From: Macrostomum lignano
Lineage: Eukaryota
Direction: 5' to 3'
Length of the DNA stretch: 29,656 bases
NCBI GenBank assembly: GCA_002269645.1
Contig: NIVC01004112.1
Location: 1 to 29,656, forward strand
The notes beneath the pieces were generated by a model that did no database searches, was not told where the DNA came from, and was given only the letters and a program-made list of their open reading frames with translations. Position 1 is the stretch's first letter, and every line of letters starts with the position of its first letter. The position numbers and the translations under genes are program-made. Shown here piece after piece: positions 2 to 20,300 of the stretch.

Positions 2-3000
2 CGCCTAAAACAGAAAACGATACAATTTAACTTCGATGTCTCTGAGGATGGGGGAATCCCATCAACGATAGGAAAGCTACAGACTATAGCGAATGTTCCT
101 GTTTTAATCACATCCATGCAGTTTCTTTCTAAAGCTGACTTCAGTGCCCCTCTTTCTTTGGTAAAAAAGACAACAACTTCTGCTGAGACGCTTACATGTC
201 TTGAAGATTTGATAGCATGTGCTTCTATCAGCGGTCGAGGACTAAACGCTGTTTCTATTTCCGTATTTTACGAGTTTACTAATTTACCTGACCTGAAATT
301 GTCGATAAAACTAAATATTTTGGTTGTTACACAACCAAGACCACGGAAAAAATCACAACGAATACAGTTACATCGACGTCAACCACCACTAAACCATCGT
401 CAACGACAACTACAACACCTACTTCGACGACCACAACCTCGACGTCGACTACGACAACGCCGCCGTCGACCACAACTACTACACCAACGTCGACAACAAC
501 CACAACGCCTTCAACAACAACTACAACACCAACATCGACGACGACAACTACAACACCTCCTTCGACGACGACAACAACAACACCTCCTGCGACGACGACT
601 ACTACAACACCTACTTCGACGACGACAACTACAACACCTACTTCGACGATGACAACTACAACGCCGACTTCGACGACGACTACTACTACACCTACTTCGA
701 CGACCACAACCTCGACGTCGACTACGACAACGCCGCCGTCGACCACAACTACTACACCAACGTCGACAGCAACCACAACGCCTTCTACGACCACGACACC
801 GCCGTCGACGACAACTACGACACCATCAACTACGACCACTACACCAACAACCACGACAACGTCGACGTCGACTAGTACTACAACGCCTTCCACTACTACA
901 GTGCCGCGTGTTTGTATTGAAATTGATGGACTTTCGAACCCATTCATCATCTCACCATCGAATATTCAAGTAATCGGTGGAACACAGTCTGGATACACGG
1001 CTTCTGATTTAGAAAAGTTGCGCCTGTCATCACCAGTCCCATTTAATTTGAACCGGCCAACGGCCACATCTTTTAGTAATCCAAATGAGAACATTCTAAT
1101 TGAAGTGAACCCTGCAGCTGAATCGACCAGCGGAGTAGAGATTGGACGAATTGAGCTGAGGTTTACAGCCCCGAAGTAACAGCCGTTCGAGTGTACAACA
1201 AGCCGACGCTTTCTCAACCAAATTGGGACACTTACTATTTCTCTGGCAGCAATCTCACGAGCTGCAAGTCAGACCTAATGGTGTGCCTTAGTACAGTCTC
1301 TATTGTGTCGAAAATGCTTCGATTCGAGGTCTTCTACACATCTGTAACTGACAAAAACAGCATCGACCTCCAAATTGGAATATATGGATGTTTCAAGCAA
1401 GGCTCCACAACTTCACCGGCGACAACGACCACGCCCACATCGACGACTACCACTCCAACGTCAACAACCACAACAACGCCTTCAACAACTACCACCACTC
1501 CGTCGTCAACAACAACCACAACGGCTTCAACAACTACAACACCAACTTCGACGACAGCTACTACAACACCAACTTCGACGACCACAACCTCGACGTCGAC
1601 TACGACAACGCCGCCGTCGACCACAACCACTACACCAACGTCGACAACAACCACAACGCCTTCAACAACAACTACAACACCAACATCGACGACGACAACT
1701 ACAACACCTCCGTCTACAACTACGACCTCAACATCGACAACCACAACGCCAACGTCGACTACAACTACGCCAACGTCGACAACTACAACGCCTACATCGA
1801 CGACGACAACTACAACACCTCCTTCTACAACTACGACCTCAACATCGACAACCACAACGCCAACGTCGACTACAACTACGCCAACGTCGACTACGACTAC
1901 GCCAACGTCGACAACTACAACGCCTACATCGACGACAACAACACCTACAACAACAACGACCTCGACGTCGACGACCACAACTCCACCGTCTACAACAACT
2001 ACGACACCATCATCAACAACGACAACCTCAAGCTCAACAACGACCACAGCACCAACGACGACAACCTCGACGTCGACCACCACGACATCGCCGTCGACGA
2101 CTACTACGCCGCCTTCGACAACCACGACTACAGAGAACATTCTTGCAAAGAGCACCTCCTTGCCGCAGCGTTGCATTGAGGAAGACGGCATGGCGAACAA
2201 TGGTCCAATTGGGTTGAGCGACATCTCTGTGAGTGCTTCCACTCAAGGTGTTGGACTCATTGCGCAAAGCGAGTTGAACCTCCTTCGTCCGTCGACGAGT
2301 GGTCTTGATGTCAACCGCGCACCTTCAGTAACCCGCAAAGATGAAAGCATTTCCTTTGACTTCAATGTCAGTGGCGACGACGGCAGTCAGTCGATTATTG
2401 GAAAGCTCAGCATCATTTCAAGCACTCCAGGATTGATTACGTCAATCCAGCTGTATAAATCGTCTGGCGTTGCTGCAATCTTCACATTAGTAAAATCTGC
2501 CAACAGTGCTGAGGACGTGGCCACGTGTAGCAATAACTTTATCGAGTGTGCCTCAATCGGCGGCCTTGGTCTACAGACAAACAGAATCAGAATCAAGTTC
2601 AACTTCATCAATACGAACAACCTTCCGGTCAATGTTCAGGTAAGCATGCTAGGATGTTACACAAGACTTTCGACCACAACATCAACGTCGACGTCGACGT
2701 CGACGTCTACGACAACATCCACATCAACCACAACTACGCCGCCGTCGACCACAACCACTACGCCAACGTCGACAACAACCACAACGCCTTCAACAACAAC
2801 TACAACACCAACATCGACGATGACAACTACAACACCTTCGACGACGACAACTAAAACACCTACTTCGACGACGACAACTACAACACCGACTTCGACGACG
2901 ACAACTACAACACCTACTTCGACGATGACAACTACAACACCGACTTCGACGACGACTACTACAACACCTACTTCGACAACAACCACAACCTCGACGTCGA

Positions 3001-6000
3001 CTACGACAACGCCGCCGTCGACCACAACTACTACACAAACGTCGACAACAACCACAACGCCTTCAACAACAACTACAACACCAACATCGACGACGACAAC
3101 TACAACACCTACTTCGACGACGACAACTACAACACCGACTTCGACGACGACAACTACAACACCGACTTCGACGACGACTACTACAACACCTACTTCGACA
3201 ACAACCACAACCTCGACGTCGACTACGACAACGCCGCCGTCGACCACAACTACTACACCAACGTCGACAACAACCACAACGCCTTCAACAACAACTACAA
3301 CACCAACATCGACGACGACAACTACAACACCTACTTCGACGACGACAACTACAACACCTCCTTCGACGACGACAACTACAACACCGACTTCGACGACGAC
3401 TACTACAACACCTACTTCGACAACAACCACAACCTCGACGTCGACTACGACAACGCCGCCGTCGACCACAACTACTACACCAACGTCGACAACAACCACA
3501 ACGCTTCAACAACAACTACAACACCAACATCGACGACGACAACTACAACACCTACTTCGACGACGACAACTACAACACCTCCTTCGACGACGACAACTAC
3601 AACACCGACTTCGACGACGACTACTACAACACCAACTTCGACGTCGACTACGACAACGCCGCCGTCGACCACAACTACTACACCAACGTCGACAACAACC
3701 ACAACGCCTTCTACGACCACGACACCGCCGTCGACGACAACTACGACACCATCAACTACGACCACTACACAACAACCACGACAACGTCGACGTCGACTAG
3801 TACTACAACGCCTTCCACTACTACAGTGCCGCGTGTTTGTATTGAAATTGATGGACTTTCGAACCCATTCATCATCTCACCATCGAATATTCAAGTAATC
3901 GGTGGAACACAGTCTGGATACACGGCTTCTGATTTAGAAAAGTTGCGCCTGTCATCACCAGTCCCATTTAATTTGAACCGGCCAACGGCCACATCTTTTA
4001 GTAATCCAAATGAGAACATTCTAATTGAAGTGAACCCTGCAGCTGAATCGACCAGCGGAGTAGAGATTGGACGAATTGAGCTGAGGTTTACAGCCCCCGA
4101 AGTAACAGCCGTTCGAGTGTACAACAAGCCGACGCTTTCTCAACCAAATTGGGACACTTACTATTTCTCTGGCAGCAATCTCACGAACTGCAAGTCAGAC
4201 CTAATGGTGTGCCTTAGTACAGTCTCTATTGTGTCGAAAATGCTTCGATTCGAGGTCTTCTACACATCTGTAACTGACAAAAACAGCATCGACCTCCAAA
4301 TTGGAATATATGGATGTTTCAAGCAAGGCTCCACAACTTCACCGGCGACAACGACCACGCCCACATCGACGACTACCACTCCAACGTCAACAACCACAAC
4401 AACGCCTTCAACAACTACCACCACTCCGTCGTCAACAACAACCACAACGGCTTCAACAACTACAACACCAACTTCGACGACAGCTACTACAACACCAACT
4501 TCGACGACCACAACCTCGACGTCGACTACGACAACGCCGCCGTCGACCACAACCACTACACCAACGTCGACAACAACCACAACGCCTTCAACAACAACTA
4601 CAACACCAACATCGACGACGACAACTACAACACCTCCGTCTACAACTACGACCTCAACATCGACAACCACAACGCCAACGTCGACTACAACTACGCCAAC
4701 GTCGACAACTACAACGCCTACATCGACGACGACAACTACAACACCTCCTTCTACAACTACGACCTCAACATCGACAACCACAACGCCAACGTCGACTACA
4801 ACTACGCCAACGTCGACTACGACTACGCCAACGTCGACAACTACAACGCCTACATCGACGACAACAACACCTACAACAACAACGACCTCGACGTCGACGA
4901 CCACAACTCCACCGTCTACAACAACTACGACACCATCATCAACAACGACAACCTCAAGCTCAACAACGACCACAGCACCAACGACGACAACCTCGACGTC
5001 GACCACCACGACATCGCCGTCGACGACTACTACGCCGCCTTCGACAACCACGACTACAGAGAACATTCTTGCAAAGAGCACCTCCTTGCCGCAGCGTTGC
5101 ATTGAGGAAGACGGCATGGCGAACAATGGTCCAATTGGGTTGAGCGACATCTCTGTGAGTGCTTCCACTCAAGGTGTTGGACTCATTGCGCAAAGCGAGT
5201 TGAACCTCCTTCGTCCGTCGACGAGTGGTCTTGATGTCAACCGCGCACCTTCAGTAACCCGCAAAGATGAAAGCATTTCCTTTGACTTCAATGTCAGTGG
5301 CGACGACGGCAGTCAGTCGATTATTGGAAAGCTCAGCATCATTTCAAGCACTCCAGGATTGATTACGTCAATCCAGCTGTATAAATCGTCTGGCGTTGCT
5401 GCAATCTTCACATTAGTAAAATCTGCCAACAGTGCTGAGGACGTGGCCACGTGTAGCAATAACTTTATCGAGTGTGCCTCAATCGGCGGCCTTGGTCTAC
5501 AGACAAACAGAATCAGAATCAAGTTCAACTTCATCAATACGAACAACCTTCCGGTCAATGTTCAGGTAAGCATGCTAGGATGTTACACAAGACTTTCGAC
5601 CACAACATCAACGTCGACGTCGACGTCGACGTCTACGACAACATCCACATCAACCACAACTACGCCGCCGTCGACCACAACCACTACGCCAACGTCGACA
5701 ACAACCACAACGCCTTCAACAACAACTACAACACCAACATCGACGATGACAACTACAACACCTCCTTCGACGACGACAACTAAAACACCTACTTCGACGA
5801 CGACAACTACAACACCGACTTCGACGACGACAACTACAACACCTACTTCGACGACGACAACTACAACACCTACTTCGACGACGACTACTACAACACCAAC
5901 TTCGACGACCACAACCTCGACGTCGACTACGACAACGCCGCCGTCGACCACAACTACTACACCAACGTCGACAACAACCACAACGCCTTCAACAACAACT

Positions 6001-9000
6001 ACAACACCGACATCGACATCGACGACGACAACTACAACACCTACTTCGACGACGACAACTACAACACCTCCTTCGACGACGACAACTACAACACCGACTT
6101 CGACGACGACTACTACAACACCAACTTCGACGTCGACTACGACAACGCCGCCGTCGACCACAACTACTACACCAACGTCGACAACAACCACAACGCCTTC
6201 TACGACCACGACACCGCCGTCGACGACAACTACGACACTATCAACTACGACCACTACACCAACAACCACGACAACGTCGACGTCGACTAGTACTACAACG
6301 CCTTCCACTACTACAGTGCCGCGTGTTTGTATTGAAATTGATGGACTTTCGAACCCATTCATCATCTCACCATCGAATATTCAAGTAATCGGTGGAACAC
6401 AGTCTGGATACACGGCTTCTGATTTAGAAAAGTTGCGCCTGTCATCACCAGTCCCATTTAATTTGAACCGGCCAACGGCCACATCTTTTAGTAATCCAAA
6501 TGAGAACATTCTAATTGAAGTGAACCCTGCAGCTGAATCGACCAGCGGAGTAGAGATTGGACGAATTGAGCTGAGGTTTACAGCCCCCGAAGTAACAGCC
6601 GTTCGAGTGTACAACAAGCCGACGCTTTCTCAACCAAATTGGGACACTTACTATTTCTCTGGCAGCAATCTCACGAACTGCAAGTCAGACCTAATGGTGT
6701 GCCTTAGTACAGTCTCTATTGTGTCGAAAATGCTTCGATTCGAGGTCTTCTACACATCTGTAACTGACAAAAACAGCATCGACCTCCAAATTGGAATATA
6801 TGGATGTTTCAAGCAAGGCTCCACAACTTCACCGGCGACAACGACCACGCCCACATCGACGACTACCACTCCAACGTCAACAACCACAACAACGCCTTCA
6901 ACAACTACCACCACTCCGTCGTCAACAACAACCACAACGGCTTCAACAACTACAACACCAACTTCGACGACAGCTACTACAACACCAACTTCGACGACCA
7001 CAACCTCGACGTCGACTACGACAACGCCGCCGTCGACCACAACCACTACACCAACGTCGACAACAACCACAACGCCTTCAACAACAACTACAACACCAAC
7101 ATCGACGACGACAACTACAACACCTCCGTCTACAACTACGACCTCAACATCGACAACCACAACGCCAACGTCGACTACAACTACGCCTACGTCGACTACG
7201 ACTACGCCAACGTCGACAACTACAACGCCTACATCGACGACAACAACACCTACAACAACAACGACCTCGACGTCGACGACCACAACTCCACCGTCTACAA
7301 CAACTACGACACCATCATCAACAACGACAACCTCAAGCTCAACAACGACCACAGCACCAACGACGACAACCTCGACGTCGACCACCACGACATCGCCGTC
7401 GACGACTACTACGCCGCCTTCGACAACCACGACTACAGAGAACATTCTTGCAAAGAGCACCTCCTTGCCGCAGCGTTGCATTGAGGAAGACGGCATGGCG
7501 AACAATGGTCCAATTGGGTTGAGCGACATCTCTGTGAGTGCTTCCACTCAAGGTGTTGGACTCATTGCGCAAAGCGAGTTGAACCTCCTTCGTCCGTCGA
7601 CGAGTGGTCTTGATGTCAACCGCGCACCTTCAGTAACCCGCAAAGATGAAAGCATTTCCTTTGACTTCAATGTCAGTGGCGACGACGGCAGTCAGTCGAT
7701 TATTGGAAAGCTCAGCATCATTTCAAGCACTCCAGGATTGATTACGTCAATCCAGCTGTATAAATCGTCTGGCGTTGCTGCAACCTTCACATTAGTAAAA
7801 TCTGCCAACAGTGCTGAGGACGTGGCCACGTGTAGCAATAACTTTATCGAGTGTGCCTCAATCGGCGGCCTTGGTCTACAGACAAACAGAATCAGAATCA
7901 AGTTCAACTTCATCAATACGAACAACCTTCCGGTCAATGTTCAGGTAAGCATGCTAGGATGTTACACAAGACTTTCGACCACAACATCAACGTCGACGTC
8001 GACGTCGACGTCTACGACAACATCCACATCAACCACAACTACGCCGCCGTCGACCACAACCACTACGCCAACGTCGACAACAACCACAACGCCTTCAACA
8101 ACAACTACAACACCAACATCGACGACGACAACTACAACACCTCCTTCGACGACGACAACTACAACACCGACTTCGACGACGACAACTACAACACCGACTT
8201 CGACGACGACTACTACAACACCTACTTCGACGACGACAACTACAACACCTACTTCGACGATGACAACTACAACGCCGACTTCGACAACAACCACAACCTC
8301 GACGTCGACTACGACAACGCCGCCGTCGACCACAACTACTACACCAACGTCGACAACAACCACAACGCCTTCAACAACAACTACAACACCAACATCGACG
8401 ACGACAACTACAACACCTCCTTCGACGACGACAACTAAAACACCTACTTCGACGACGACAACTACAACACCGACTTCGACGACGACTACTACAACACCTA
8501 CTTCGACGACGACAACTACAACACCTACTTCGACGACGACTACTACAACACCAACTTCGACGACCACAACCTCGACGTCGACTACGACAACGCCGCCGTC
8601 GACCACAACCACTACACCAACGTCGACAACAACCACAACGCCTTCAACAACAACTACAACACCGACATCGACATCGACGACGACAACTACAACACCTACT
8701 TCGACGACGACAACTACAACACCCACAACGTCGACCACAACCTCGACGTCGACTACAACAACGCCGCCGTCGACCACAACTACTACACCAACATCGACAA
8801 CAACCACAGCGGCTTCGACATCTACAACTCCAAGTTCGACAACAACTACAAAACCAACTTCGACGACGACAACTACAACACCTACTTCGTCGACGACAAC
8901 TACAACACCAACTTCGACGGCAACGACCACGACACCGCCGTCGACAACAACCCCGTATACGACACTAAACACAACATCTGCAACGACTACTACGACACCA

Positions 9001-9139
9001 ACATCAACAACCACAACTCCACCGTCGTCTACAAATACAACATCTACTTCGACAACTACTTTGTCGACTTCAATATCGACGTCAGTAACCACTTCTCCTG
9101 GGATTTCAGGCACACCTACATGTGTGATGATTGAGCCGA
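2..9139 (+). CDS. Giant repeat exon (>9.1 kb): [domain B0]-Thr-[A1]-Thr-[B1]-Thr-[A2]-Thr-[B2]-Thr-[A3]-Thr-[B3]-Thr
   Basis: ORF-track segments 116..652, 649..1179, 1191..3800 and 3826..9207 join into one frame if one base is restored at each of ~318-321 (TTTT), 1169-1172 (CCCC vs CCCCC at 4094-4098), ~3504 and ~3770. Donor CCGA|GTGAGT at 9139/9140. Confidence 0.85.
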
Positions 9140-12100
9140 GTGAGTATTTGTTTTATATTATTATTTTGTTCTTGATAGTGCTAAACATACGAATTCTAAT
9201 TATTTGAAAACCGTTTTTTAGCGACTCCTCCTCCATGTCTTGCTCGCGGTGACTGCGAGTGCATGGTGGCTATGAGCGAAGTCTCCAAGGAGTTGCAGTT
9301 GTCTGAGTCTTATCCAAGAGACGTTTGGGTTGAGTTGGACGGCACCTCAGGTTTGTCCTCTCCTTTAGAAAAGATTAATGAAGGTGACATGCTGGAGTCT
9401 GGTGTGGTTATTCGGATAGACTGCGGCCAGTGCAGCTGCAGCAATGGCGCTCTCCGGTGCAGTAAGACGAACTGCTCGAACGATTGTCAGTGGGGCCAGT
9501 GGAAGCCGTGGGGCTCCTGCTCATCGACCTGCGGCACCGGTGTTCGGTACAGAAATCGCACCGTCGCTTCTCCTGCTCGGTTCGGCGGCGAGCCGTGTCA
9601 GCCTAAAGACTTCCAGGTAAGCTGTGTCCAAAATCCGTTCCTACAACGGAATGGAGCCGAGCTCCGTTAGCAATCGATAGTTTGTCTGACTAGCCAAATA
9701 TAGGGGAGATTTCGCACCAGTCTCCCTGGCCACTTTACAGGCTGTTTAGACATTCCCGTTATTAACTGCTAATCTCTGAAGACATATTCGAAGACAGTTT
9801 CATTCTATCTGAAGCCTTAGTCGACGTGAGATCCGTCTTATTCAGTACAGACCGGTGCTTTAGTTGAAGCCGCTAGCTTATTGTAGATAAAACAGTCGTG
9901 TGTTCTGAACTAATTCTTTGAATTGTTCAATTATTCAGGAATTTGAGCTGTGCAACACTCAGAGATGTCCGTGCGTGTGGAGTCAGTGGTCTGCCTGGTC
10001 CGACTGCTCTCAGACCTGCAACGGCGGAGTAAAGACCCGGACGAGGACGCCCCAGGGCGACTGCCTGCTAGAGGACGCAACCACCGAGACAGCCCTGTGC
10101 AACGTTCATCCGTGCGGCTCGACCACTACTTCGCCAAGCTGCTCCGAGGGCAAGGTGATGCGACAGTGCAGCACCACGTCCTGCCCTTACACCTGTGGTC
10201 ATGTCACTAACGAGACCTGTTCAGACCAGCTGGCCTGCTCAACTGGCTGCTTCTGCGAGCAAGGCTTCGTGTTCGACGAGAAAGCCCGGGCCTGCGTGAA
10301 GCCGGACCAGTGCACCTGCGACCTGACCACCCTGAGCTGCGGCCTCTGCTCGCAGGGCCGCTGCGTCAACGGCGTTGCCACCTGCGTGCCAACAACAAAC
10401 TGCGACTGCACCTGGGGACCCTGGTCAGACTGGGAGCCCTGCTCGAAGGCCTGCGACGGCGGCTCAAGGACTCGAACCCGGGCCCAGGCTACCAGCCGTC
10501 GCGGCACCGGTCGAGCCTGCGTTGGCCTCGCCTCTGAGTCAGAGCCATGCAATACGGGCCGCTGCCCAGGCTGCTTGGACCGCTTCGGCAACCGGGTGCC
10601 GCCTGGCGAAACCATGCCCTCCGAGAACCCCTGCGAGATCTGCTACTGCAGCTACTTCACCGGCAGGCCCGAGTGCATGCCGAAACGCCCAGACGACGCG
10701 TCGAATCCGGCGCCGCAGTGGTCTGATTGGTCGGAATTCTCAGCCTGCAGCGCGCCGTGCGGCACGGGCACCAAGCGCCGGAGCCGCGCCTGCGTCCGCC
10801 TGTGCGTCAACGACACGCGCAGCTGCGCTCCGGACGCCAGGGGCCGCATGGACGCCGATCAGCAGTCCTGCAACCGGCAGGATTGCGCCCCACCAGTCGA
10901 CTGTCAAGTCTCCGACTGGACTAACGGCACCTGCTATGCCAACTGTGACGGCGTCAACCCCACCGCCACCGGCCAACAGCTGCGGCTCCGCCAGATCACC
11001 AGGCAGGCGGCCAACGGTGGCAAGGCCTGTCCGTCAACTTACGAAGTTGTTCCGTGCAGCAAGCAGTGCAAAGTGGACTGTCTGGTAGGCCAGTGGTCCG
11101 CCTGGAGCGAGCGAGTCAAGAACTGCGTCGGCACCGGCTGCAATCCCAGCTGCGGCGTTGGCGAGCGGGAGAGAACCCGGCCAGTGCTGCGGCCGGCGGC
11201 CAACGGAGGCCAGGCGTGTCGAGACCACGAGTTCGAGCCCGTGCTGATGCCCTGCAACGAGACCGTCTGCTCCGGCCCAGAGACTCTCATCAGCTGCGCC
11301 ACCAAGTGCTGGCGAACTTGCTCGGATGTGCGCGCCAACAAGCAGTGCCAGGACGTCGGCTGCATGCAGGGCTGCGGCTGCGCTGGAGACAAGGTCAGGG
11401 AGGCCGACACCTGCGTCGCGGTGGCCGAGTGCAGCTGCGAGCATCCGGAGAACGCGAGCCGCCTGATGCCGCCGGGCTCGGTGGTGAACAAGGCCTGCAA
11501 CAAGTGCACCTGCGTCAGCGGCCAGTTCGTCTGCGAGGAGAAGAGCTGCGCCCAGGACTGCGTCTGGTCGGCTTGGCAGAAAGTTGGCGGCTGCAACGTC
11601 ACCTGCGGCTCCGGCAAGCAGACCTGGACCAGGTAAATTCGTAGAGACTGGCTCTGGATACGCCTCTGACCCTGTGACCAACAGCCAGTGGACACTGAAC
11701 CCTGGACAGAGAGTCATTATTAGACACTGAACTCTGGACAGAGAGCCATTATTAGATACTGAACCCTGGACAGAGAGCCATTGTTAGACACTGAACCCTG
11801 GACAGAGAGCCATTATTAGATACTGAACTCTGGACAGAGAGCCATTATTAGACACTGAACCCTGGACAGAGAGCCATTATTAGACACTGAACTCTGGACA
11901 GAGAGCCATTATTAGACACTGAACCCTGGACAGAGAGTCATTATAGACACTGAACCCTGGACAGAGAGCCATTATTAGATACTGAACCCTGGACAGAGAG
12001 CCATTGTTAGACACTGAACCCTGGACAGAGAGCCATTATTAGACACTGAACTCTGGACAGAGAGCCATTATTAGACACTGAACCCTGGACAGAGAGCCAT

Positions 12101-12755
12101 TATTAGACACTGAACCCTGGACAGAGAGCCATTATTAGACACTGAACTCTGGACCCGACCTCCCCTCAGATCCATCGCAACCCCAGCTGCCAACGGCGGT
12201 GCCGAGTGCGTCGGGCCGACCAGCCGCGTCACCGACTGCTTCGGCGACGAGGGTGCCTGCTGCAACCCCAATGACGCGTACGTGGACACCGGCCGATGCG
12301 AGACCACCTGCGCCCAGCTGCTGAACCCGGAGCTCGCGCAGCCGCACTCCAACTGCCAGCCGGGTTGCCAGTGCAAGCCGGGCATGGCCAGGAACGCCAA
12401 CGGCAGCTGCGTCAGCATCCAGGACTGCTTCGCCTGCCAGGTGAACGGCGGGCGGCGGCGGTTGTGGGCTAACTAGCTAGCTAGCTAACTAACTAACTAG
12501 CTAAGTAACTAACTAGCTAACTAACTAACTAACTAACTAGCTAACTAACTAGCTAACTAACTAGCTAACTAACTAGCTAACTAACTAGCTAACTAACTAG
12601 CTAACTAACTAACTAGCTAACTAACTAGCTAACTAACTAACTAGCTAACTAACTAACTAACTATGCAATAACTAACTAACTAACTAACTAACTAGCTAAC
12701 TAACCAACTAACCAACTAACTAACTAACTAACTAACTAGCTAACTAACTAGCTAG

Positions 12756-12798
<43 letters not shown>

Positions 12799-12995
12799 GC
12801 TAACTAACTAGCTAGCTAACTAACTAACTAACTAATTAACTAACTAGCTAACTAACTAACTAACTAACTAACTAGCTAACTAACTAACTAGCTAACTAAC
12901 TAACTAACTAACTAACTAGCTAGCTAACTAACTAACTAATTAACTAACTAGCTAACTAACTAACTAACTAACTAACTAGCTAACTAACTAACTAG

Positions 12996-13052
<57 letters not shown>

Positions 13053-13133
13053 ACTAACTGACTAACTAACTAACTAGCTAACTAACCAACTAACCAACTA
13101 ACTAACTAACTAACTAGCTAACTAACTAGCTAG

Positions 13134-13176
<43 letters not shown>

Positions 13177-13253
13177 GCTAACTAACTAGCTAGCTAACTA
13201 ACTAACTAACTAATTAACTAACTAGCTAACTAACTAACTAACTAACTAACTAG

Positions 13254-13288
<35 letters not shown>

Positions 13289-13361
13289 GCTAGCTAACTA
13301 ACTAACTAATTAACTAACTAGCTAACTAACTAACTAACTAACTAGCTAACTAACTAACTAG

Positions 13362-13423
<62 letters not shown>

Positions 13424-14495
13424 GACTAACTAACTAACTAACTAACTAACTGACTGACTAACTAACTAACTGACTGACTAACTAACTAACTAACTAACTA
13501 ACTAGCTAACTAACTAACTAACTAACTAACTAACTGACTAACAGGTGAACGGCGTCGTCTGGCCCAGCGGCCGTGTGGACGTGGACCGGGCCAACTGCAG
13601 CAAGCGGCTGTGCCTTCATGGCCAGCTGTCAACACAGCCGCTCGAACTCTCCGAGGTGCCGCCCTGCACGCTGTCCGACGAGGTGCAGGCCGGCACCGCC
13701 GGATCCGAAGCGCAGCGGGTGATGGACAAGTCCGGCTGCTGCTACCGGGCCAGCCTGCGGGCCTGCGCCAGGGGCAGCACCCTGCTGAGGGAGGCCAAAC
13801 GTCCGGACGGCCGCTTCTGCCGGTTCGCCACTCCAGTCAGCATCGACCGGTGCGTAGGCGCCTGTCCGGGTAGCAACTCTGTGCACGTCACTGAGCAGGT
13901 GAGTCCGAGCCTTGATGTGGGTAGCCTAATGGGCAGTGCCTAAGAGAGGCAGAGTCTCAGGCACTGAGGGAGAGGCAGATTCTCAGGCACTGAGGGAGAG
14001 GCAGATTTTCAGGCACTGAGGGAGAGGCAGATTCTCAGGCACTGAGGGAGAGGCAGATTCTCAGGCACTGAGGGAGAGGCAGATTCTCAGGCACTGAGGG
14101 AGAGGCAGATTCTCAGGCACTGAGGGAGAGGCAGATTCTCAGGCACTGAGGGAGAGGCAGATTCTCAGGCACTGAGGGAGAGGCAGATTCTCAGGCACTG
14201 AGGGAGAGGCAGATTCTCAGGCACTGAGGGAGAGGCAGATTCTCAGGCACTGAGGGAGAGGCAGATTCTCAGGCACTGATCGGGGAGGCACCAGCAGGAA
14301 TCCAGTGAATCGCACAGCTGCCCCACTGCACCACTGCAGGGCACGGTGAAGGTGATGGGCGAGTGCTCCTGCTGCAACCCGACGGGCTACCGGGCCAAGC
14401 CGGCCATCACGGCGGCCTGCACGGACGGCGGCAGCATGCAGCTGACTCTGTACGCTATCGAGGGCTGCAAGTGCTCGGCCGGACTCAAGCCGTGA
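2..14495 (+). CDS. 5'-truncated giant secreted mucin / SCO-spondin-hemocytin-like protein. Model: join(<2..9139, 9222..9616, 9939..11632, 12170..12440, 13545..13898, 14340..14495), with four -1 frameshifts in the first exon
   Basis: All five introns are GT..AG with matching phases (1,0,2,0,0) and give one continuous protein. TSP1 motifs (W-x-x-W-x-x-C..C-G-x-G..R-x-R) are split across the 9616/9939 and 11632/12170 junctions, and the cystine knot is split across 13898/14340. Stop TGA at 14493-14495. Confidence 0.88.
901..1394 (+). other. Globular domain type A, copy 1 (further copies 3826..4320 and 6316..6810); divergent discoidin/FA58C-like
   Basis: ~165 aa, begins RVCIEIDGLSNPFIISPSNIQV and ends LQIGIYGC. 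This matches the C..G...I..S.I start and LxLxxxGC end of FA58C domains; an internal C-x6-C is also present. Confidence 0.55.
2163..2666 (+). other. Globular domain type B, copy 1 (further copies 5089..5592 and 7468..7971; diverged partial copy B0 at <2..~330); homologous to type A
   Basis: 168 aa, QRCIEEDGMANNGPIGLSDISV...CSNNFIEC...VQVSMLGCY. Aligns to type A at the first Cys, IG(R/K) core, C-x6-C and terminal GC. Confidence 0.55.
9222..9616 (+). CDS. Exon: Cys-flanked RGD, vWC-like module, first TSP1 repeat (N-part)
   Basis: Acceptor TTTTTAG|CG at 9221/9222, donor CAG|GTAAGC at 9616/9617; encodes TPPPCLARGDCEC...DCGQCSCSNGALRC...DCQWGQWKPWGSCSSTCGTG. Confidence 0.88.
9939..11632 (+). CDS. 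Exon: TSP1 repeats, two TIL domains, vWC-like modules
   Basis: Acceptor TTATTCAG|GAA, donor ACCAG|GTAAAT; WSxWSxC motifs, spondin-type DCxVxxW..AANGGxAC repeats, TIL pattern CxxTC..C..GCxC..G..C. Confidence 0.92.
11691..12153 (+). repeat. 32-bp minisatellite, ~14 copies (GACACTGAACCCTGGACAGAGAGCCATTATTA), intron 11633..12169
   Basis: Unit starts at 11691, 11723, 11755. Confidence 0.95.
12170..12440 (+). CDS. Exon: end of TSP1 repeat 7 and third TIL domain
   Basis: Acceptor CCCCTCAG|A completes the phase-2 Arg codon; SIATPAANGGAECVG...CETTCAQ...CQPGCQCKPG...CVSIQDC; donor CAG|GTGAAC. Confidence 0.88.
12469..13542 (+). repeat. (TAAC)n microsatellite with TAGC/TGAC variants, filling intron 12441..13544
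   Basis: Directly visible. Confidence 0.98.
13545..13898 (+). CDS. Exon: vWC-like remnant and N-half of C-terminal cystine knot
   Basis: Acceptor CTAACAG|GTG, donor CAG|GTGAGT; ...FCRFATPVSIDRCVGACPG. Confidence 0.85.
13944..14279 (+). repeat. 26-bp minisatellite, ~13 copies (GAGAGGCAGATTCTCAGGCACTGAGG), intron 13899..14339
   Basis: Unit starts at 13944 and 13970. Confidence 0.96.
14340..14495 (+). CDS. Terminal exon: C-half of cystine knot (CTCK)
   Basis: Acceptor CACTGCAG|GGC; GTVKVMGECSCCNPTGYRAKPAITAACTDGGSMQLTLYAIEGCKCSAGLKP* shows the CxCCxP...CxDG...IxxCxC pattern. This frame is absent from the ORF track. Confidence 0.85.
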   Translation, partial: GTVKVMGECSCCNPTGYRAKPAITAACTDGGSMQLTLYAIEGCKCSAGLKP

Positions 14496-16865: not shown

Positions 16866-17360
16866 TCAGCGAATTGGGCCGACGCCGGGCGGGTCCTGCT
16901 CGGCGGCAGCGAGCTCAGCGGTGGCCTGCTTGAGCTCGTGCAGGGTCCGGCCAAGCAGCTTCCATTCCTCCTGGCGCGGCGAGGCCAGGCTGTCCGCCAG
17001 CTCGAACACGGTCAGCCGGCCGAGGTGGTCGCCGGCGCCGAGCAGCAGGCCGGAGTCGCTGAACCGGCAACGGTTGACGGCCGCGTCGCACTGGGCCCTG
17101 GCGGCGGCCTGCTCGGTGTCCAAGTTCAGCTGCCAGAAGTCCAGCCGGCCGAGGGCGTCAGCGGCGCAGAACAGGGCCGGGTTCACCGGCGACCAGCACA
17201 GGTCCATCACGTAGTCGGAGGTCTCCTCGAACACGTGCACCGTGCCGAGGTCGCGGAGAGACCAAAGGCGGACAGTCCAGTCGAACGAGGCCGACAGGAC
17301 GATGTGGCCGAGATCGACTGGGCCGGTGGCGCGATGGGTGGCCACGGCCGACACGGGGCC
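16866..17360 (-). CDS. DYNC1I: Dynein IC exon 5 (WD40, stop)
   Basis: Acceptor CTCCAG|GGC; TGA at 16868-16866. Confidence 0.93.
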   Translation of the reverse strand, partial: GPVSAVATHRATGPVDLGHIVLSASFDWTVRLWSLRDLGTVHVFEETSDYVMDLCWSPVNPALFCAADALGRLDFWQLNLDTEQAAARAQCDAAVNRCRFSDSGLLLGAGDHLGRLTVFELADSLASPRQEEWKLLGRTLHELKQATAELAAAEQDPPGVGPIR

Positions 17361-20300
17361 CTGGAGTGGCCGAGGGGGGTGGGGTTGCAGTGAACTGCAT
17401 GCACGGCACTGCTGGGTGATTGATGCCCTATTGTATAGAGCTCTCCACTCTATGCTCCCTTCTCTTCCCAACCCTCTATACTCTCTCCCATTGTCTCCAC
17501 TCTCTCTTAATCTTCTCTCATCTCTTCCTGTCTTTTCTCTCTCTACATATCATCTCCTACTTTCTCATCATCTCATCTCTCCCCATGTTTTTTCATATCT
17601 TCCCACCATCTCCCATCTCTTCCCACCATCTCTGATCTATCCCCATCATCTCTACTCTTCCCCAAACTTCCCTAATCTCCCCCAATCACCTCTACTCTCC
17701 CCCAATCTCTACTCTCCCCAATCCTCTCTACTCTCCCCCAATCACCTCCACTCTCCCCCAATCCTCTCTACTCTCCCCTAATCTCTACTCTCCCCAATCC
17801 TCTCTACTCTCCCCCAATCACCTCCACTCTCCCCCAATCCTCTCTACTCTCCCCCAATCACCTCCACTCTCCCCCAATCACCTCTACTCTCTTCCCCAAT
17901 CACTTCTACTCTCCCCCGATCACCTCTACTCTTCCCCAATCACTTCTACTCTCCCCCAATCACCTCTACTCTCCCCCAATCCTCTCTACTCTCCCTCAAT
18001 CCTTCCTACGGTACTCTACCCCAGCTCTCATCTCGGACGAGCCAGCAACCCTCGAACAATCGGCAGCTTCCCAGACTACAAGAGAGCCAGACTGTCCCAT
18101 CGCACTCGCCAAGCAGCCAGGCGTGCTGAGCCTTAAACAGCGGGCAGTGCGCGCGGGTAAAGAGGGCCCCGCCAGCAAAACAGCAGAGGGCGCCTTCAAA
18201 ATATGTTTTGGCAGAGCATTTGTCACCGAAGCGAGCAATGTATTATTAATTGTTCTGCACTTCGGCAAAGATTGGCTGCGCTGTGTTAAATAACATTTTT
18301 GTAACTTTGCAACCTACAGCTGTGTAACCAGGGTGCTTCCCTCGGCTTATGGAGATCGTGAAGATTTTTAAAAGTGTTTGTAGTACAGTCGTAAAATTCC
18401 GATATGCTCTTCAATTTGCAACTTCCCTGAAAACCCTCCAACATCCCTAAAAACCCTCCAACATCCCTAAAAACCCTCCAACATCCCTAAAAACCCTCCA
18501 ACCAGTGGTCCCAGCGAGTAGGTCACTGATTTTTCGCAACATTCTATTTTTTTTCGCGCATAGATCAAAATCATATGGCGCGCACAACCTTGAAAAGGGT
18601 GCACTGTAATTCTTTTAGGTACGCGCTACACTGTGACAAAAATGTCAGCGAAAGTGCAAACCGTGTTGATGTTTGATGCAACCACAACCACCTGATAGTC
18701 AATTTTAGTCTACCACCTACATTGCTTTCAGAAATTAATGATTCCAGCAACCAAGGATTACAAATAAAAAGGGCTTGTCAACTTAAGCTCATAAAGTGGA
18801 GCCCAAGTAACCATGTACACAAATGATGTCATTCTGCTCACAGTGACACCAGAAAGCTGGGTTCGGCAAGTGACAAAAGTTGGACTTGGGATAGAGAAGA
18901 GAAAGAGAGGGGATAATTAGGGACTCTATTTTTTTAACTTAAGTTGACATAATATTCCCAATTATCCCCTTTGGTTGTTCTTCCATGTTCTAAAGGTCGT
19001 TACTAGGGTTACACATCCTCGAGAGCCTTTGGAATAAAAACAGTGATATTCATAAAACAGTGAAGAAAAGAAACGTGGATAATTTTAATCAGTAACTTTG
19101 ACCGAATCTCAAGTTAGTCAGCAGTAAGAATAGTGCAATTGTAAATTTACTCATCCAACTCGGCCTGTGGCTTCTCCACATAGTTGCCATCCAAATGCAC
19201 ACACTTCTGCCACCTGGACCACATGGCGTTGATAGCCTCGGCAAACGCAGAGAGAGGCATTTCGTAGAGGATGACGTGGCGAGTGAGGCTTTCAAGTTCA
19301 CTTCGGTTTTGAAAAACCCAGCCGCGAAGAAGTTTCTTTATTTGGGGGAAAATTGCAAAATTGGCAGGTGCCAAATCTGGCGAGTATGGCGGGTGAGGCA
19401 GCAACTCAAAGTTAAACTGCTTCGATCTTCCTCCTAAATCTTCGTCCTTCCCGCTGTATGGGGTGGAGCATTATCATGATGCAAAGCAGGGCTTCTCGCC
19501 AGAACGACGCCACTTGTTCCTAAGATTTTGATGTCCGTAGGCCAGGCCATAGACATTGACAAGTTTTACACGTTTGTGGCACGAATTTAAATCCATTTAC
19601 CACGAACAAAATAACTTCAAAATGTACTCGAGGATGTGTAACCCTAGTACCGACCTTAGCGAACATTTTATGTGTAGCAAAGAGATGCTTAGACATATTG
19701 ACGTGATTCAAAAAGCTACATTTTTATGAGAAATTTATCTTTCGTTTAACACCAAGGACGTGAAAATATGATTAGTAACTGTGGAGCAATGATAGAAATT
19801 CCGGGAACTTTAGGGACACCCTTCGTAGAAGCATGAACTTTCAAAAATTTCGCGCCAATCAGTTGCGAAAAATTCGCGCCATTGCTGTAAAATTTGCGCA
19901 TTCGCGCCTCACTGGGACCACTGCCTACAACATCCCTAAAAACCCTCCAACATCTCTAAAAACTCCCTAAAATCCCTAAAAACTCCTCAAAATCCTAGAA
20001 AAACTCCCTAAAATCCCTAAAAACTCCCCAACATTCCTAAAAACTCCCCAAAATTCCTAAAAACTCTCCAAAATCCCTAAAAACTTTCTAGAATCCCTAA
20101 AAGCTCTCCAAAATCCCTAAACATCTCCAAAATCCCTAAAAACTCTCCAAAATCCCTAAAAACTCTCCAAAATCCCTAAAAACTCTCCAAAATCCCTAAA
20201 AACGCCCCAAAATCCCTAGAGACATCCAAAAATCCTTAAAAAAACTCTTCAAAATCCCTAAAAACTTGGCGAAAAGTTGCCAGGCGGCGCGCACCTGGTG

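What the first reader, a model, noticed from the sequence alone, without database searches (positions are those of the whole stretch)
2..14495. Beads-on-a-string lectin-mucin: alternating discoidin-like domains in a Thr brush, capped by a SCO-spondin-type polymerisation tail
Seen: at least 7 globular domains of two alternating types separated by 190-390-aa Thr-rich linkers in one >9-kb exon, then 7 TSP1, 3 TIL, vWC-like modules and a cystine knot. Known: gel-forming mucins have PTS + vWD/TIL + CTCK but not TSP1 arrays; SCO-spondin and insect hemocytin carry only one or two FA58C domains and no such PTS array. Inference: a hybrid secreted polymer in which many ligand-binding beads are spaced along an O-glycosylated rod and dimerised tail-to-tail. 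It is a candidate mucus, glue or extracellular-fibre protein; I do not recognise this architecture as a named family.
Basis: partly seen in the sequence, partly recalled or inferred. Interest (0 to 1): 0.8.

Follow-up and report, generated by a model that had tools for sequence, protein, structure and literature searches.

The report
Flatworm mucin paralogous to glue protein
This is the 3' two-thirds of a real, expressed giant secreted glycoprotein gene of the flatworm Macrostomum lignano, an uncharacterised, acidic, mucin-like paralogue of the published glue protein Mlig-ap2, so the architecture is already known but this member is new.

Summary
Window 2-14495 (+) encodes about 4,000 aa. One exon of at least 9.1 kb holds seven Cys-bounded beads (B'-A-B-A-B-A-B) separated by 188-389-aa linkers that are 96% Thr/Ser/Pro. 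Five more exons encode 7 TSP1, 3 TIL, weak VWC-like modules and a C-terminal cystine knot.

The organism is Macrostomum lignano. The tail is colinear with the C-terminus of the adhesive protein Mlig-ap2 (31% identity, E 2e-88). The N-terminus, found in UniProt A0A1I8GJ02, carries VWD-C8-TIL plus LDLa and is colinear with the Mlig-ap2 N-terminus. So the "unnamed architecture" is that of Mlig-ap2 (Wunderer 2019), and this is a paralogue.

- Orthologue transcripts join the Thr-rich exon to the tail.
- 23 published footprint peptides map exactly to the gene, two of them across splice junctions.
- Tail dN/dS is 0.13.
- The four frameshifts are 1-nt deletions that look like long-read assembly errors.
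- The beads have no sequence homologues. A moderate AF2 model resembles discoidin/galactose-binding jelly rolls.
- Beads and linkers are acidic or neutral, whereas those of Mlig-ap2 are strongly basic.

This points to a disulfide-polymerised mucus protein rather than the glue. Verdict: new member of a known kind.

The parts
2..322 (+). Bead B' (third bead type), C-terminal about 105 aa. It is cut by the window start. Frame 2, with a 1-nt deletion in a T run near 300 before ...FGCYTTK.
   Evidence: tblastn 37% identity to B. Sequence view. Footprint peptides ADFSAPLSLVK and (K)TTTSAETLTCLEDLIACASISGR map to 134-238.
340..903 (+). PTS linker L0 (188 aa; 68% T, 14% S, 13% P)
   Evidence: 27-nt (9-aa) tandem periodicity
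904..1403 (+). Bead A1, with a single C missing from a C5 run at 1169 (frame 1 to frame 3)
   Evidence: There are only 2 differences from A2 in 542 nt.
1404..2159 (+). PTS linker L1 (252 aa)
2160..2666 (+). Bead B1 (169 aa)
   Evidence: footprint peptides
2667..3828 (+). PTS linker L2 (about 387 aa), with two 1-nt deletions near 3500 and 3765 (frame 3 to 2 to 1)
3829..4329 (+). Bead A2 (167 aa, intact)
   Evidence: Peptides LSSPVPFNLNR...GVEIGR and FTAPEVTAVR map here.
4330..5085 (+). PTS linker L3 (252 aa)
5086..5592 (+). Bead B2 (169 aa). This is the sequence modelled with AF2.
5593..6318 (+). PTS linker L4 (242 aa)
6319..6819 (+). Bead A3, identical in DNA to A2
6820..7464 (+). PTS linker L5 (215 aa)
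7465..7971 (+). Bead B3, the variant carrying ..AATF..
   Evidence: Peptide SSGVAATFTLVK maps only here.
7972..9139 (+). PTS linker L6 (389 aa) and the end of the giant exon (phase 1; donor GTGAGT at 9140)
   Evidence: The junction is confirmed by orthologue transcripts.
9222..9616 (+). Tail exon 2: Cys-rich VWC/FnI-like module and TSP1 no. 1
   Evidence: Pfam. Peptides ELQLSESYPR and DVWVELDGTSGLSSPLEK.
9939..11632 (+). Tail exon 3, in order: TSP1 no. 2, TIL 1, TSP1 no. 3, VWC-like, TSP1 nos. 4-6, TIL 2, VWC-like, start of TSP1 no. 7
   Evidence: Pfam. WxxW and CSxTCG motifs. Peptide DFQEFELCNTQR spans the 9616|9939 junction.
12170..12440 (+). Tail exon 4: end of TSP1 no. 7 and TIL 3
   Evidence: Pfam TIL 35 bits. 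Peptides SIATPAANGGAECVGPTSR and VTDCFGDEGACCNPNDAYVDTGR.
13545..13898 (+). Tail exon 5: Cys-rich VWC-like stretch and the first half of the C-terminal cystine knot
   Evidence: Peptide FATPVSIDR.
14340..14495 (+). Tail exon 6: second half of the cystine knot (CSCCNP...GCKCS) and the stop codon at 14493-14495
   Evidence: VWF CK domain 4nt5, E 0.0014. Peptide CVGACPGSNSVHVTEQGTVK spans the 13898|14340 junction.

Best explanation
Window 2-14495 is the 3' part of a very large Macrostomum lignano gene. It encodes a secreted, heavily O-glycosylated protein that polymerises through disulfide bonds.

Shown:
- It is a paralogue of the adhesive protein Mlig-ap2. Both are built on a SCO-spondin/hemolectin-like scaffold.
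- The domain order is N-terminal VWD-C8-TIL assemblies and LDLa repeats (these lie outside the window), then a long array of about 170-aa Cys-bounded beads separated by nearly pure Thr/Ser/Pro linkers, then a TSP1/TIL/VWC-like tail ending in a cystine knot.
- It is transcribed, spliced as modelled and translated.
- It is present in the material that worms leave on surfaces.

Inferred, by analogy with VWF and gel-forming mucins:
- The cystine knot dimerises chains tail to tail.
- The D'D3-like assembly links dimers head to head.
- The PTS linkers become stiff glycan brushes.
- The beads, probably divergent discoidin-type jelly rolls, act as spaced interaction nodes, much as CysD domains do in MUC2 and MUC5AC.

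Most likely role: the beads are mildly acidic (pI about 5) and the linkers uncharged, whereas Mlig-ap2 beads and linkers are strongly basic (pI 10-12). I therefore think this is a structural polymer of the worm's mucus (gliding, protective or trail mucus) and not the surface-binding glue itself. I put the mucus reading at about 0.55.
For: Organism and locus:
- P0003 (BOX15_Mlig003285g1) is 100% identical over exon 3.
- L001 (NIVC01002293.1) is 99.4% identical over window 5909-11771.

Paralogy with Mlig-ap2:
- Tail against the Mlig-ap2 C-terminus (from supplement 1 of PMC6410801): 31% identity, E 2e-88, colinear over q11-950 / s59-1001.
- P0121 (UniRef100_A0A1I8GJ02) links VWD x2, C8, TIL and LDLa to bead B at 99% identity.
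- The P0121 N-terminus is colinear with the Mlig-ap2 N-terminus: 27.6% identity, E 5e-87.
- The P0121 N-terminus matches the D'D3 assemblies of VWF, MUC5B and MUC2.

One gene, expressed:
- Transcript contigs L002-L005 span the PTS-to-tail junction.
- Tail dN/dS is 0.125 and 0.133 against two orthologues.
- 23 peptides from Dataset S2 (footprints_Trypsin_intact_1 and _2) map exactly. Two of them map only across the modelled splice junctions.

Domains and chemistry:
- Cystine knot.
- PTS composition.
- Charge contrast with Mlig-ap2.
- Bead fold: AF2 pLDDT 63, pTM 0.67. The top Foldseek hits are APC10, the CASPR2 discoidin domain, FVIII C2, CBM32, neuropilin b1 and the DDR2 discoidin domain, with probabilities 0.96-1.0.

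Frameshifts as assembly errors:
- The older contig carries 14 further 1-nt C deletions in a stretch where the window is open.
- Peptide FTAPEVTAVR spans the A1 frameshift site in its intact form.

Context: flatworm mucus is stripped with the disulfide reductant N-acetylcysteine (PMC9229212).
Against: - No expression site is known. The footprint samples also hold vitellogenin-like protein, tubulin and other cell proteins. Presence there shows deposition on the surface, not a source in a particular gland.
- No peptide was found in the stored parts of the PNA pull-down or the tail datasets. Those files were cut when stored, so this is inconclusive.
- The link between the N-terminus and the window rests on a collapsed gene model and on one transcript group. 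It does not rest on contiguous DNA.
- The cystine knot and the VWC-like modules are below Pfam thresholds.
- The bead fold comes from a 4-sequence alignment. Foldseek E-values are 2e-3 to 2e-2 and TM is about 0.45.
- The four frameshifts cannot be proven to be errors from this window alone.
Confidence: 0.7

Rival explanations
1. It is a third component of the duo-gland glue. [quoted passage not shown]
For: - It is a paralogue of Mlig-ap2 with the same plan.
- Its peptides occur in both footprint sheets, with 13-19 peptides per transcript fragment.
Against: [quoted passage not shown]
- Earlier tail-specific in situ screens assigned four transcripts to Mlig-ap2 and none to this gene (PMC6410801).
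- The chemistry is opposite: acidic or neutral here, strongly basic in Mlig-ap2.
- The footprint samples are visibly contaminated with non-glue proteins.
Confidence: 0.18
2. It is the product of the releasing gland. On this reading it is a carbohydrate-rich polyanionic mucin that competes with cationic Mlig-ap1 and triggers detachment.
For: - Releasing vesicles are PAS-positive and poor in nitrogen (PMC6410801, Fig. S19 legend).
- The release factor was still unidentified in 2022 (PMC9229212).
- A protein whose linkers are 96% T/S/P would be mostly glycan by mass.
- The beads are acidic.
- The protein is present in footprint material.
Against: - The authors predict a small molecule.
- There is no evidence on where the gene is expressed.
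- The charge of the glycans is unknown.
- A polymer of several thousand residues (about 4,000 aa in the window alone) is an odd fast-acting release agent.
Confidence: 0.07
3. This copy is a decaying pseudogene. The frameshifts are real, and the peptides and transcripts come from another near-identical copy.
For: - There are four frameshifts in the first 3.8 kb.
- M. lignano carries duplicated loci.
- Peptides cannot tell apart copies that are 99% identical.
Against: - All four are 1-nt deletions, and at least two lie in homopolymer runs. This is the error type seen 14 more times in the older contig at sites where the window is intact.
- There are no stop codons within the correct frames.
- Splice sites and all 956 tail codons are intact.
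- The bead copies differ by 0-2 nt.
Confidence: 0.05
4. It is the flatworm orthologue of SCO-spondin and makes a neural or extracellular fibre rather than mucus.
For: - VWD plus LDLa, TSP1 interleaved with TIL, and a cystine knot.
- A fish SCO-spondin fragment (P0035) aligns to tail residues 451-952 (E 7e-34).
- Invertebrate mucin-like proteins cluster with SCO-spondins (PMC4948705).
Against: - There is about 1,900 aa of PTS in the window alone.
- There are only 7 TSP1 modules.
- The protein is recovered from material left on glass by the worms.
Confidence: 0.03

Closest known systems
Mlig-ap2, Macrostomum lignano adhesion protein 2 (GenBank MH586845; Wunderer et al. 2019, PMC6410801), and the ap2-like proteins of other Macrostomum species (PMC8621496)
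   Same: - Same species and the same overall plan: VWD/C8/TIL and LDLa at the N-terminus, then a long array of repeats, then a TSP1/TIL tail with a cystine-knot-like end.
- Each repeat is a Cys-bounded domain of about 150-170 aa followed by a Thr-rich stretch.
- The tails are colinear over about 950 aa (31% identity, E 2e-88).
- The N-termini are colinear over about 1,000 aa (27.6% identity, E 5e-87).
- Both are found in footprint mass spectrometry.
   Different: - The beads show no detectable sequence similarity to Mlig-ap2 repeats (BLAST and hhalign).
- The beads have 4 Cys, against 2 in Mlig-ap2.
- Two or more bead types alternate here. Mlig-ap2 has two homogeneous blocks of 21 and 25 repeats.
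- The linkers are almost pure T/S/P and uncharged. Mlig-ap2 linkers are K/R-rich (pI 12).
- The beads have pI about 5, against about 10.
- The tail is closer to outgroup proteins than the Mlig-ap2 tail is: 250 vs 147 bits to a monogenean protein, and 126 vs 60 bits to a SCO-spondin fragment.
- No functional data exist for this gene.
SCO-spondin and invertebrate SCO-spondin-like mucins (Lang et al. 2016, PMC4948705); insect hemolectin/hemocytin
   Same: - VWD assemblies plus an LDLa cluster.
- TSP1 repeats interleaved with TIL/VWC-type modules.
- A C-terminal cystine knot.
- The authors' own annotation of the N-terminal transcript gives Drosophila Hml and human MUC5B as best hits.
- From my own knowledge: SCO-spondin and hemocytin carry one or two F5/8-type-C (discoidin) domains. 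These are a plausible source of the beads.
   Different: - Those proteins have no long PTS array and no amplified bead series.
- SCO-spondin has many more TSP1 repeats.
- The beads do not match the Pfam discoidin model.
Vertebrate gel-forming mucins (MUC2, MUC5AC, MUC5B) and VWF
   Same: - A D'D3-type VWD-C8-TIL assembly. P0121 residues 564-1092 match the D'D3 regions of MUC2, MUC5B, MUC5AC and VWF at E 1e-110 to 1e-128.
- Very long PTS domains interrupted by small globular Cys-containing domains, comparable to CysD.
- A C-terminal cystine knot that aligns with the VWF CK dimerisation domain.
   Different: - The tail has TSP1 and TIL modules in place of D4 and the VWC series.
- LDLa repeats are present.
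- The interrupting domains are about 170-aa predicted jelly rolls, not CysD domains.

Membership tests
Mlig-ap2 / flatworm ap2-like proteins | C-terminal TSP1/TIL region homologous to and colinear with Mlig-ap2 | tested here: met
   blastp of the spliced tail against the published Mlig-ap2 C-terminus gives 31% identity, E 2e-88, over q11-950 / s59-1001.
Mlig-ap2 / flatworm ap2-like proteins | N-terminal VWD, C8, TIL and LDLa region | tested here: met
   This region lies outside the window. P0121 (A0A1I8GJ02) has VWD x2, C8, TIL x2 and LDLa x4 or more, followed by bead B at 99% identity. It is colinear with the Mlig-ap2 N-terminus (E 5e-87). One 2,625-aa transcript group in Dataset S2 holds both VWD/LDLa peptides and bead B peptides.
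Mlig-ap2 / flatworm ap2-like proteins | Central array of long repeats (a globular unit plus a Thr-rich stretch) making up most of the protein | tested here: met
   There are seven beads and seven linkers in the window. The repeat units are not similar in sequence to RP-1 or RP-2. The same lack of conservation is reported between species for ap2 repeats (PMC6745481).
Mlig-ap2 / flatworm ap2-like proteins | Basic, Lys/Arg-rich repeat region, as in the proposed surface-binding protein | tested here: not met
   Beads have pI 5.0-5.4, and the linkers are 96% T/S/P with about 0.5% K. Mlig-ap2 beads have pI 9.7-10.0 and its linker has pI 12.
Mlig-ap2 / flatworm ap2-like proteins | Present in secreted footprints | tested here: met
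   23 peptides from Dataset S2 (footprints, trypsin, two sheets) map exactly to the window model. The samples also contain obvious non-glue proteins.
Mlig-ap2 / flatworm ap2-like proteins | Expression in adhesive gland cells and loss of attachment on RNAi | not testable with these tools
   No in situ or RNAi data were found for this gene. The transcript ids RNA815_290.1, RNA1310_22614 and RNA1509_11446 are absent from the searchable literature and from the stored Arbore 2015 supplements.
Gel-forming mucins | PTS domain(s) plus N-terminal VWD assemblies, including a D3-type multimerisation module | tested here: met
   PTS composition. P0121 against the D'D3 regions of VWF, MUC5B, MUC5AC and MUC2: E 1e-110 to 1e-128. 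Whether there are three full D assemblies is unknown, because the model lacks its start.
Gel-forming mucins | C-terminal D4 - VWC series - CTCK, with no TSP1 repeats | tested here: not met
   There is no VWD in the tail. There are seven TSP1 and three TIL modules instead. A CTCK is present.
SCO-spondin | VWD + LDLa cluster + TSP1 repeats interleaved with TIL/SCOR modules + CTCK | tested here: met
   SCO-spondin fragments P0035 and P0080 align to the tail through to the cystine knot.
SCO-spondin | No mucin-type PTS array; some 25 TSP1 repeats; an EMI domain; forms Reissner's fibre (from my knowledge of the family) | tested here: not met
   About 1,900 aa of PTS and only 7 TSP1 modules are in the window. 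The EMI domain and tissue of expression were not tested.
Discoidin / F5_F8_type_C domain (for the beads) | Match to the family's sequence profile | tested here: not met
   No Pfam hit for A, B, B' or C at E up to 10. An exhaustive HMMER profile search of 1.84 billion representatives found only the M. lignano protein itself.
Discoidin / F5_F8_type_C domain (for the beads) | Eight-stranded jelly-roll fold with the first and last Cys at the two ends of the domain | tested here: inconclusive
   - AF2 model of B: pLDDT 63, pTM 0.67, all-beta. The C-terminal 110 residues have pLDDT 75-89, and the N-terminal third is below 50.
- Foldseek top 50 is dominated by galactose-binding-domain-like folds: APC10, the CASPR2 and DDR2 discoidin domains, FVIII C2, CBM32 and neuropilin b1.
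- However, E is 2e-3 to 2e-2 and TM is about 0.45.
- Terminal Cys residues are present in the sequence (C5 and C166 of B).

The most novel reading that the evidence does not exclude
This acidic, almost wholly glycan-bearing paralogue of Mlig-ap2 could be the long-sought product of the releasing gland. It would be a polyanionic mucin that masks the cationic Lys/Arg repeats of Mlig-ap1 and so detaches the worm.

A milder version is more likely (I put it at about 0.4). On that reading, this gene is the ancestral-type mucus gene. The glue protein Mlig-ap2 would have evolved from it by charge inversion of beads and linkers, and the beads would be amplified, highly diverged discoidin domains of a hemolectin/SCO-spondin-like ancestor.
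Probability: 0.07. Interest if true: 0.8.

Novelty: new member of a known kind. Interest (0 to 1): 0.5.

Why it matters
Macrostomum lignano is the main model for reversible underwater adhesion. Its two glue proteins are seen as templates for biomimetic adhesives.

A second giant protein with the same scaffold as the surface-binding protein, but with opposite charge, gives a natural comparison for two questions:
- Which features make a mucin-type polymer sticky (basic beads and linkers) rather than lubricating or protective (neutral glycan brush, acidic beads)?
- How did a glue evolve from mucus? That idea was already raised for flatworm adhesives (PMC6745481).

The protein already sits unannotated in the published footprint proteome. 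Its contribution to footprints, mucus trails or release can therefore be tested at once with in situ hybridisation and RNAi.

On the practical side, the window gives a better gene model than the public one. The public model is truncated by an assembly frameshift.

Tried and rejected
- Word-index homologue search with beads A+B: no hit.
- Exhaustive profile search with A/B/B': only M. lignano A0A1I8GJ02 and one spurious bacterial repeat protein. The beads therefore have no detectable relatives elsewhere.
- BLAST and hhalign of the beads against Mlig-ap2 repeats RA and RB and its N-terminal unique domains: nothing significant (best hhalign probability 0.4%). Homology of the beads between the two paralogues is unproven.
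- Pfam on all bead types at E up to 10: nothing.
- First AF2 model (bead A, 3 sequences): pLDDT 48. Its Foldseek list was not usable.
- The look-up of encoding contigs for P0121: not on record.
- The public contig NIVC01002293.1 ends inside the repeat array at window 5909, so it gives no upstream DNA.
- Literature searches for the gene and transcript identifiers found nothing.
- The Arbore 2015 supplements have no entry for RNA815_290.
- No peptides were found in the stored parts of the PNA pull-down and tail datasets. Both files were truncated, so this was not interpreted.
- Rfam scan of the window: nothing.
- Rejected: that this is Mlig-ap2 itself or an allele of it. The tails are only 31% identical.
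- Rejected: that the repeat exon and the tail are separate genes. Transcripts and peptides cross the junctions.

Full report
**1. What is in the sequence**

The + strand of window 2-14495 carries one long coding region. From position 2 to a GTGAGT donor at 9140 there is no intron. Instead, globular segments alternate with Thr-rich segments.

tblastn of the two globular types places the beads as follows:
- B' at 2-322 (cut by the window start; 37% identical to B)
- A1 at 904-1403
- B1 at 2160-2666
- A2 at 3829-4329
- B2 at 5086-5592
- A3 at 6319-6819
- B3 at 7465-7971

A and B are homologous to each other (26% identity, E 4e-12). Each starts with ..C-I-E-x-D-G.. and ends with ..G-C-[FY]. An internal C-x6-C brings the count to four Cys.

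The copies of each type are almost identical in DNA, with 0-2 differences in about 540 nt. The A-linker-B-linker superunit of 2.4-2.9 kb was therefore amplified or homogenised very recently.

The linkers are 188-389 aa long. Over 1,903 residues they are 67.5% Thr, 16.3% Ser and 12.3% Pro, with a 9-residue (27-nt) periodicity and no in-frame stops. This is a textbook mucin PTS domain.

**2. The frameshifts**

The reading frame changes four times, at about 300, 1169, about 3500 and about 3765. Each time one base is lost (frame 2 to 1 to 3 to 2 to 1).
- The one in A1 is a C4 run where A2 and A3 have C5.
- The one at about 300 is a T run just before ..FGCYTTK.

The older public contig for the same locus is L001 (NIVC01002293.1, GCA_002269645.1). 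It is 99.4% identical over window 5909-11771 and carries 14 additional 1-nt deletions, nearly all of a C, in a stretch where the window reads through. One of them, at window 10396, explains why the NCBI model BOX15_Mlig003285g1 starts at an internal Met.

The published footprint peptide FTAPEVTAVR covers the A1 frameshift site in its intact form.

I therefore read the four frameshifts as residual long-read assembly errors. This inference cannot be proven from the window alone.

**3. The tail**

Five further exons with canonical GT-AG introns give a 956-aa Cys-rich tail ending at a stop codon at 14493-14495. The exons are 9222-9616, 9939-11632, 12170-12440, 13545-13898 and 14340-14495.

Pfam and motif scans give the following:
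- Seven TSP1 repeats. Five are above a gathering score on their own. Two have E 5e-10 to 7e-9 but fall just below the cut-off.
- Three TIL domains.
- Three short VWC/FnI-like modules below threshold.

The last 75 or so residues align Cys for Cys with the crystallised dimeric CK domain of VWF (4nt5, E 0.0014). They are below the Pfam Cys_knot cut-off (18.5 vs 24 bits).

**4. Organism, and evidence that it is one expressed gene**

The tail exon is 100% identical to a Macrostomum lignano protein.

Four transcript contigs from public sequencing runs (Logan assemblies) encode tails 81-85% identical to the window's. They are L002 from SRR28338165 and L003-L005 from SRR30276804, SRR30276812 and SRR30276815, and they come from related species. 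Upstream of the called ORF they read ..TTTT..GTPTCLMLEP|TTPPPCLARGDC.. in a single frame. This is exactly the junction I predicted between the giant exon (phase 1) and exon 2.

The tail is under purifying selection, with dN/dS of 0.125 and 0.133.

**5. It is a paralogue of a characterised protein**

Wunderer et al. 2019 (PMC6410801) described Mlig-ap2. It has 14,794 aa, with two VWD, TIL and an LDLa domain at the N-terminus, 46 central repeats of 255 or 221 aa, and TSP1 repeats at the C-terminus. It is O-glycosylated with Gal-beta1-3-GalNAc, made in the adhesive gland, and required for attachment.

Its full sequence is printed in their supplement. Each repeat is a Cys-bounded domain of about 150 aa followed by a Thr-rich stretch. 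That is the same beads-on-a-string plan.

The window's tail aligns end to end with the Mlig-ap2 C-terminus (31% identity, E 2e-88).

An exhaustive profile search with the beads found one protein, P0121 (UniRef100_A0A1I8GJ02, M. lignano 'VWFD domain-containing protein').
- It has VWD x2, C8, TIL x2 and LDLa x4 or more.
- These are followed by bead B (99% identity), a further bead type C, and out-of-frame PTS.
- Its N-terminus is colinear with the Mlig-ap2 N-terminus (27.6% identity, E 5e-87).
- It matches the D'D3 assemblies of VWF, MUC5B, MUC5AC and MUC2.

Both ends of the protein are therefore homologous to Mlig-ap2.

**6. Direct proteomic evidence**

I searched the supplementary mass-spectrometry tables of the same paper with tryptic peptides predicted from the window. 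Dataset S2 is described in the main text as mass spectrometry of adhesive footprints. Its sheets footprints_Trypsin_intact_1 and _2 contain three unannotated transcript groups that belong to this gene:
- A 2,625-aa VWD transcript. The authors' automatic annotation gives MUC5B, Crassostrea 'mucin-17-like' and Drosophila Hemolectin as best hits. It has 16-19 peptides, including both P0121 N-terminal peptides and bead B peptides.
- A 738-aa fragment (RNA1509_11446 / RNA815_290.1 / RNA1310_22614) with bead A and bead B' peptides.
- A 1,176-aa tail transcript with 8-13 peptides.

All 23 bead and tail peptides that I could read map exactly to the window model. DFQEFELCNTQR and CVGACPGSNSVHVTEQGTVK map only across the 9616|9939 and 13898|14340 junctions.

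The protein is therefore made, spliced as modelled, and present in material that worms leave on a surface.

There is a caveat. The same sheets are headed by vitellogenin-like protein and also list tubulin and similar cell proteins. The samples are therefore not pure glue.

The stored parts of the PNA pull-down and tail datasets contain none of these peptides. Those files were cut when stored, so I draw no conclusion from that.

**7. The beads**

No Pfam family matches any bead type, even at E 10. No relatives exist outside M. lignano among 1.84 billion representative proteins. Neither BLAST nor hhalign links the beads to the Mlig-ap2 repeat domains.

An AF2 model of bead A from three sequences was poor (pLDDT 48). 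A model of bead B from four sequences was better.
- pLDDT is 63 and pTM is 0.67.
- It is all-beta. The C-terminal 110 residues have pLDDT 75-89, and the N-terminal third is disordered.
- Its Foldseek hits in the PDB are almost all galactose-binding-domain-like jelly rolls: APC10/Doc1, the CASPR2 and DDR2 discoidin domains, factor V and VIII C domains, CBM32 modules and neuropilin b1.
- Probabilities are 0.96-1.0, but E is only 2e-3 to 2e-2 and TM is about 0.45.

The Cys residues at the two ends of the domain also fit. 'Discoidin-like' is therefore a reasonable but unproven description of the fold. It is not family membership, and lectin activity is not shown.

From general knowledge, hemolectin/hemocytin and SCO-spondin carry one or two discoidin domains near their LDLa/VWD regions. 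The beads could be amplified, fast-evolving descendants of such a domain. This is inference.

**8. How it probably works**

Shown: the domain inventory, expression, and deposition on surfaces.

Inferred from the well-studied VWF and mucin assembly pathway (PMC7599080 and related work listed):
- The cystine knot forms disulfide-linked tail-to-tail dimers.
- The D'D3-type assembly forms head-to-head links.
- The PTS linkers are densely O-glycosylated and extended.
- The beads provide regularly spaced non-glycosylated nodes for cross-links or ligand binding.

The physico-chemical contrast with Mlig-ap2 is strong. Beads here have pI 5.0-5.4, against 9.7-10.0. Linkers here are uncharged, against pI 12.

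The window's tail is also the more conservative of the two. It scores 250 against 147 bits to a monogenean protein, and 126 against 60 bits to a fish SCO-spondin fragment.

I therefore favour a mucus polymer (gliding, trail or protective mucus) that resembles the ancestor from which the basic glue protein diverged. This agrees with the idea that flatworm adhesives evolved from mucus proteins (PMC6745481). It also agrees with the use of the disulfide reductant N-acetylcysteine to strip flatworm mucus (PMC9229212).

Two alternatives remain open. It could be a third glue component. More speculatively, it could be the carbohydrate-rich, nitrogen-poor content of the releasing gland (Fig. S19 legend). 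Only localisation and knock-down can decide.

**9. Novelty and verdict**

The gene is a new, uncharacterised member of the Mlig-ap2 / SCO-spondin-like mucin kind. What is new:
- An improved gene model.
- Recognition of the cystine knot.
- A tentative fold for the beads.
- The charge contrast with the glue paralogue.
- The fact that its peptides are already in the published footprint data.

Interest is moderate. It is useful to the bioadhesion field and easy to test, but it is not a new category.

**10. Surroundings**

Downstream, on the minus strand, lies a cytoplasmic dynein 1 intermediate chain gene.

The introns of both genes consist largely of mini- and microsatellites.

A Mos1-type transposase HTH fragment lies at the window end.

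Noticed in passing
window 16866-26563, minus strand: This is a cytoplasmic dynein 1 intermediate chain gene, convergent with the mucin gene. Its exons lie at about 25985-26563, 22288-22692, 20196-20927 and 16866-17471. The 20196-20927 exon matches human DYNC1I2 at E 1e-91, and WD40 Pfam hits are present.
   Followed up: partly
window 11691-12154, 12469-13542, 13944-14279, and many arrays between 15078 and 26116: Introns 3-5 of the mucin gene are almost entirely tandem repeats: a 32-bp unit x14.5, (CTAA)n x269 and a 26-bp unit x12.9. The introns of the neighbouring dynein gene are likewise filled with 20-30-bp minisatellites.
   Followed up: no
window 29108-29422 (+): An ORF fragment with the HTH_48 domain of Mos1/mariner transposases (E 1.4e-9). 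It is probably a transposon remnant at the edge of the window.
   Followed up: partly
L001 (NIVC01002293.1), corresponding to window 5909-11771, notably window 10396: The public Mlig_3_7 contig ends inside the repeat array. It carries 14 extra 1-nt deletions relative to the window. The one at window 10396 truncates the NCBI model BOX15_Mlig003285g1 to an internal Met at window 10614.
   Followed up: yes
Dataset S2 of PMC6410801 (no window coordinates): The footprint proteome holds a second VWD, MUC5B/Hemolectin-like transcript that differs from this gene's N-terminal transcript. It is 8,908 nt and 2,969 aa, with pI 5.6 and 11 peptides. It may be a further mucin-like paralogue deposited by the worms.
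   Followed up: no
P0121 residues about 1395-1545, and peptide LSVFGCFEK (outside the window): A further bead type (C) follows bead B in the UniProt model. The model's ending ..LSVFAHKTT appears to be frameshifted, because the footprint peptide reads LSVFGCFEK, which is the usual ..GC[FY] bead ending. Several peptides of the 2,625-aa transcript map neither to P0121 nor to the window, so more of the protein lies upstream.
   Followed up: partly
window 1334-2242 (-), 4260-5168 (-), 6750-7547 (-), and off-frame + ORFs over the linkers: Long ORFs run antisense or out of frame across the PTS regions. They are by-products of the (ACN)n codon repeats and are not genes.
   Followed up: yes
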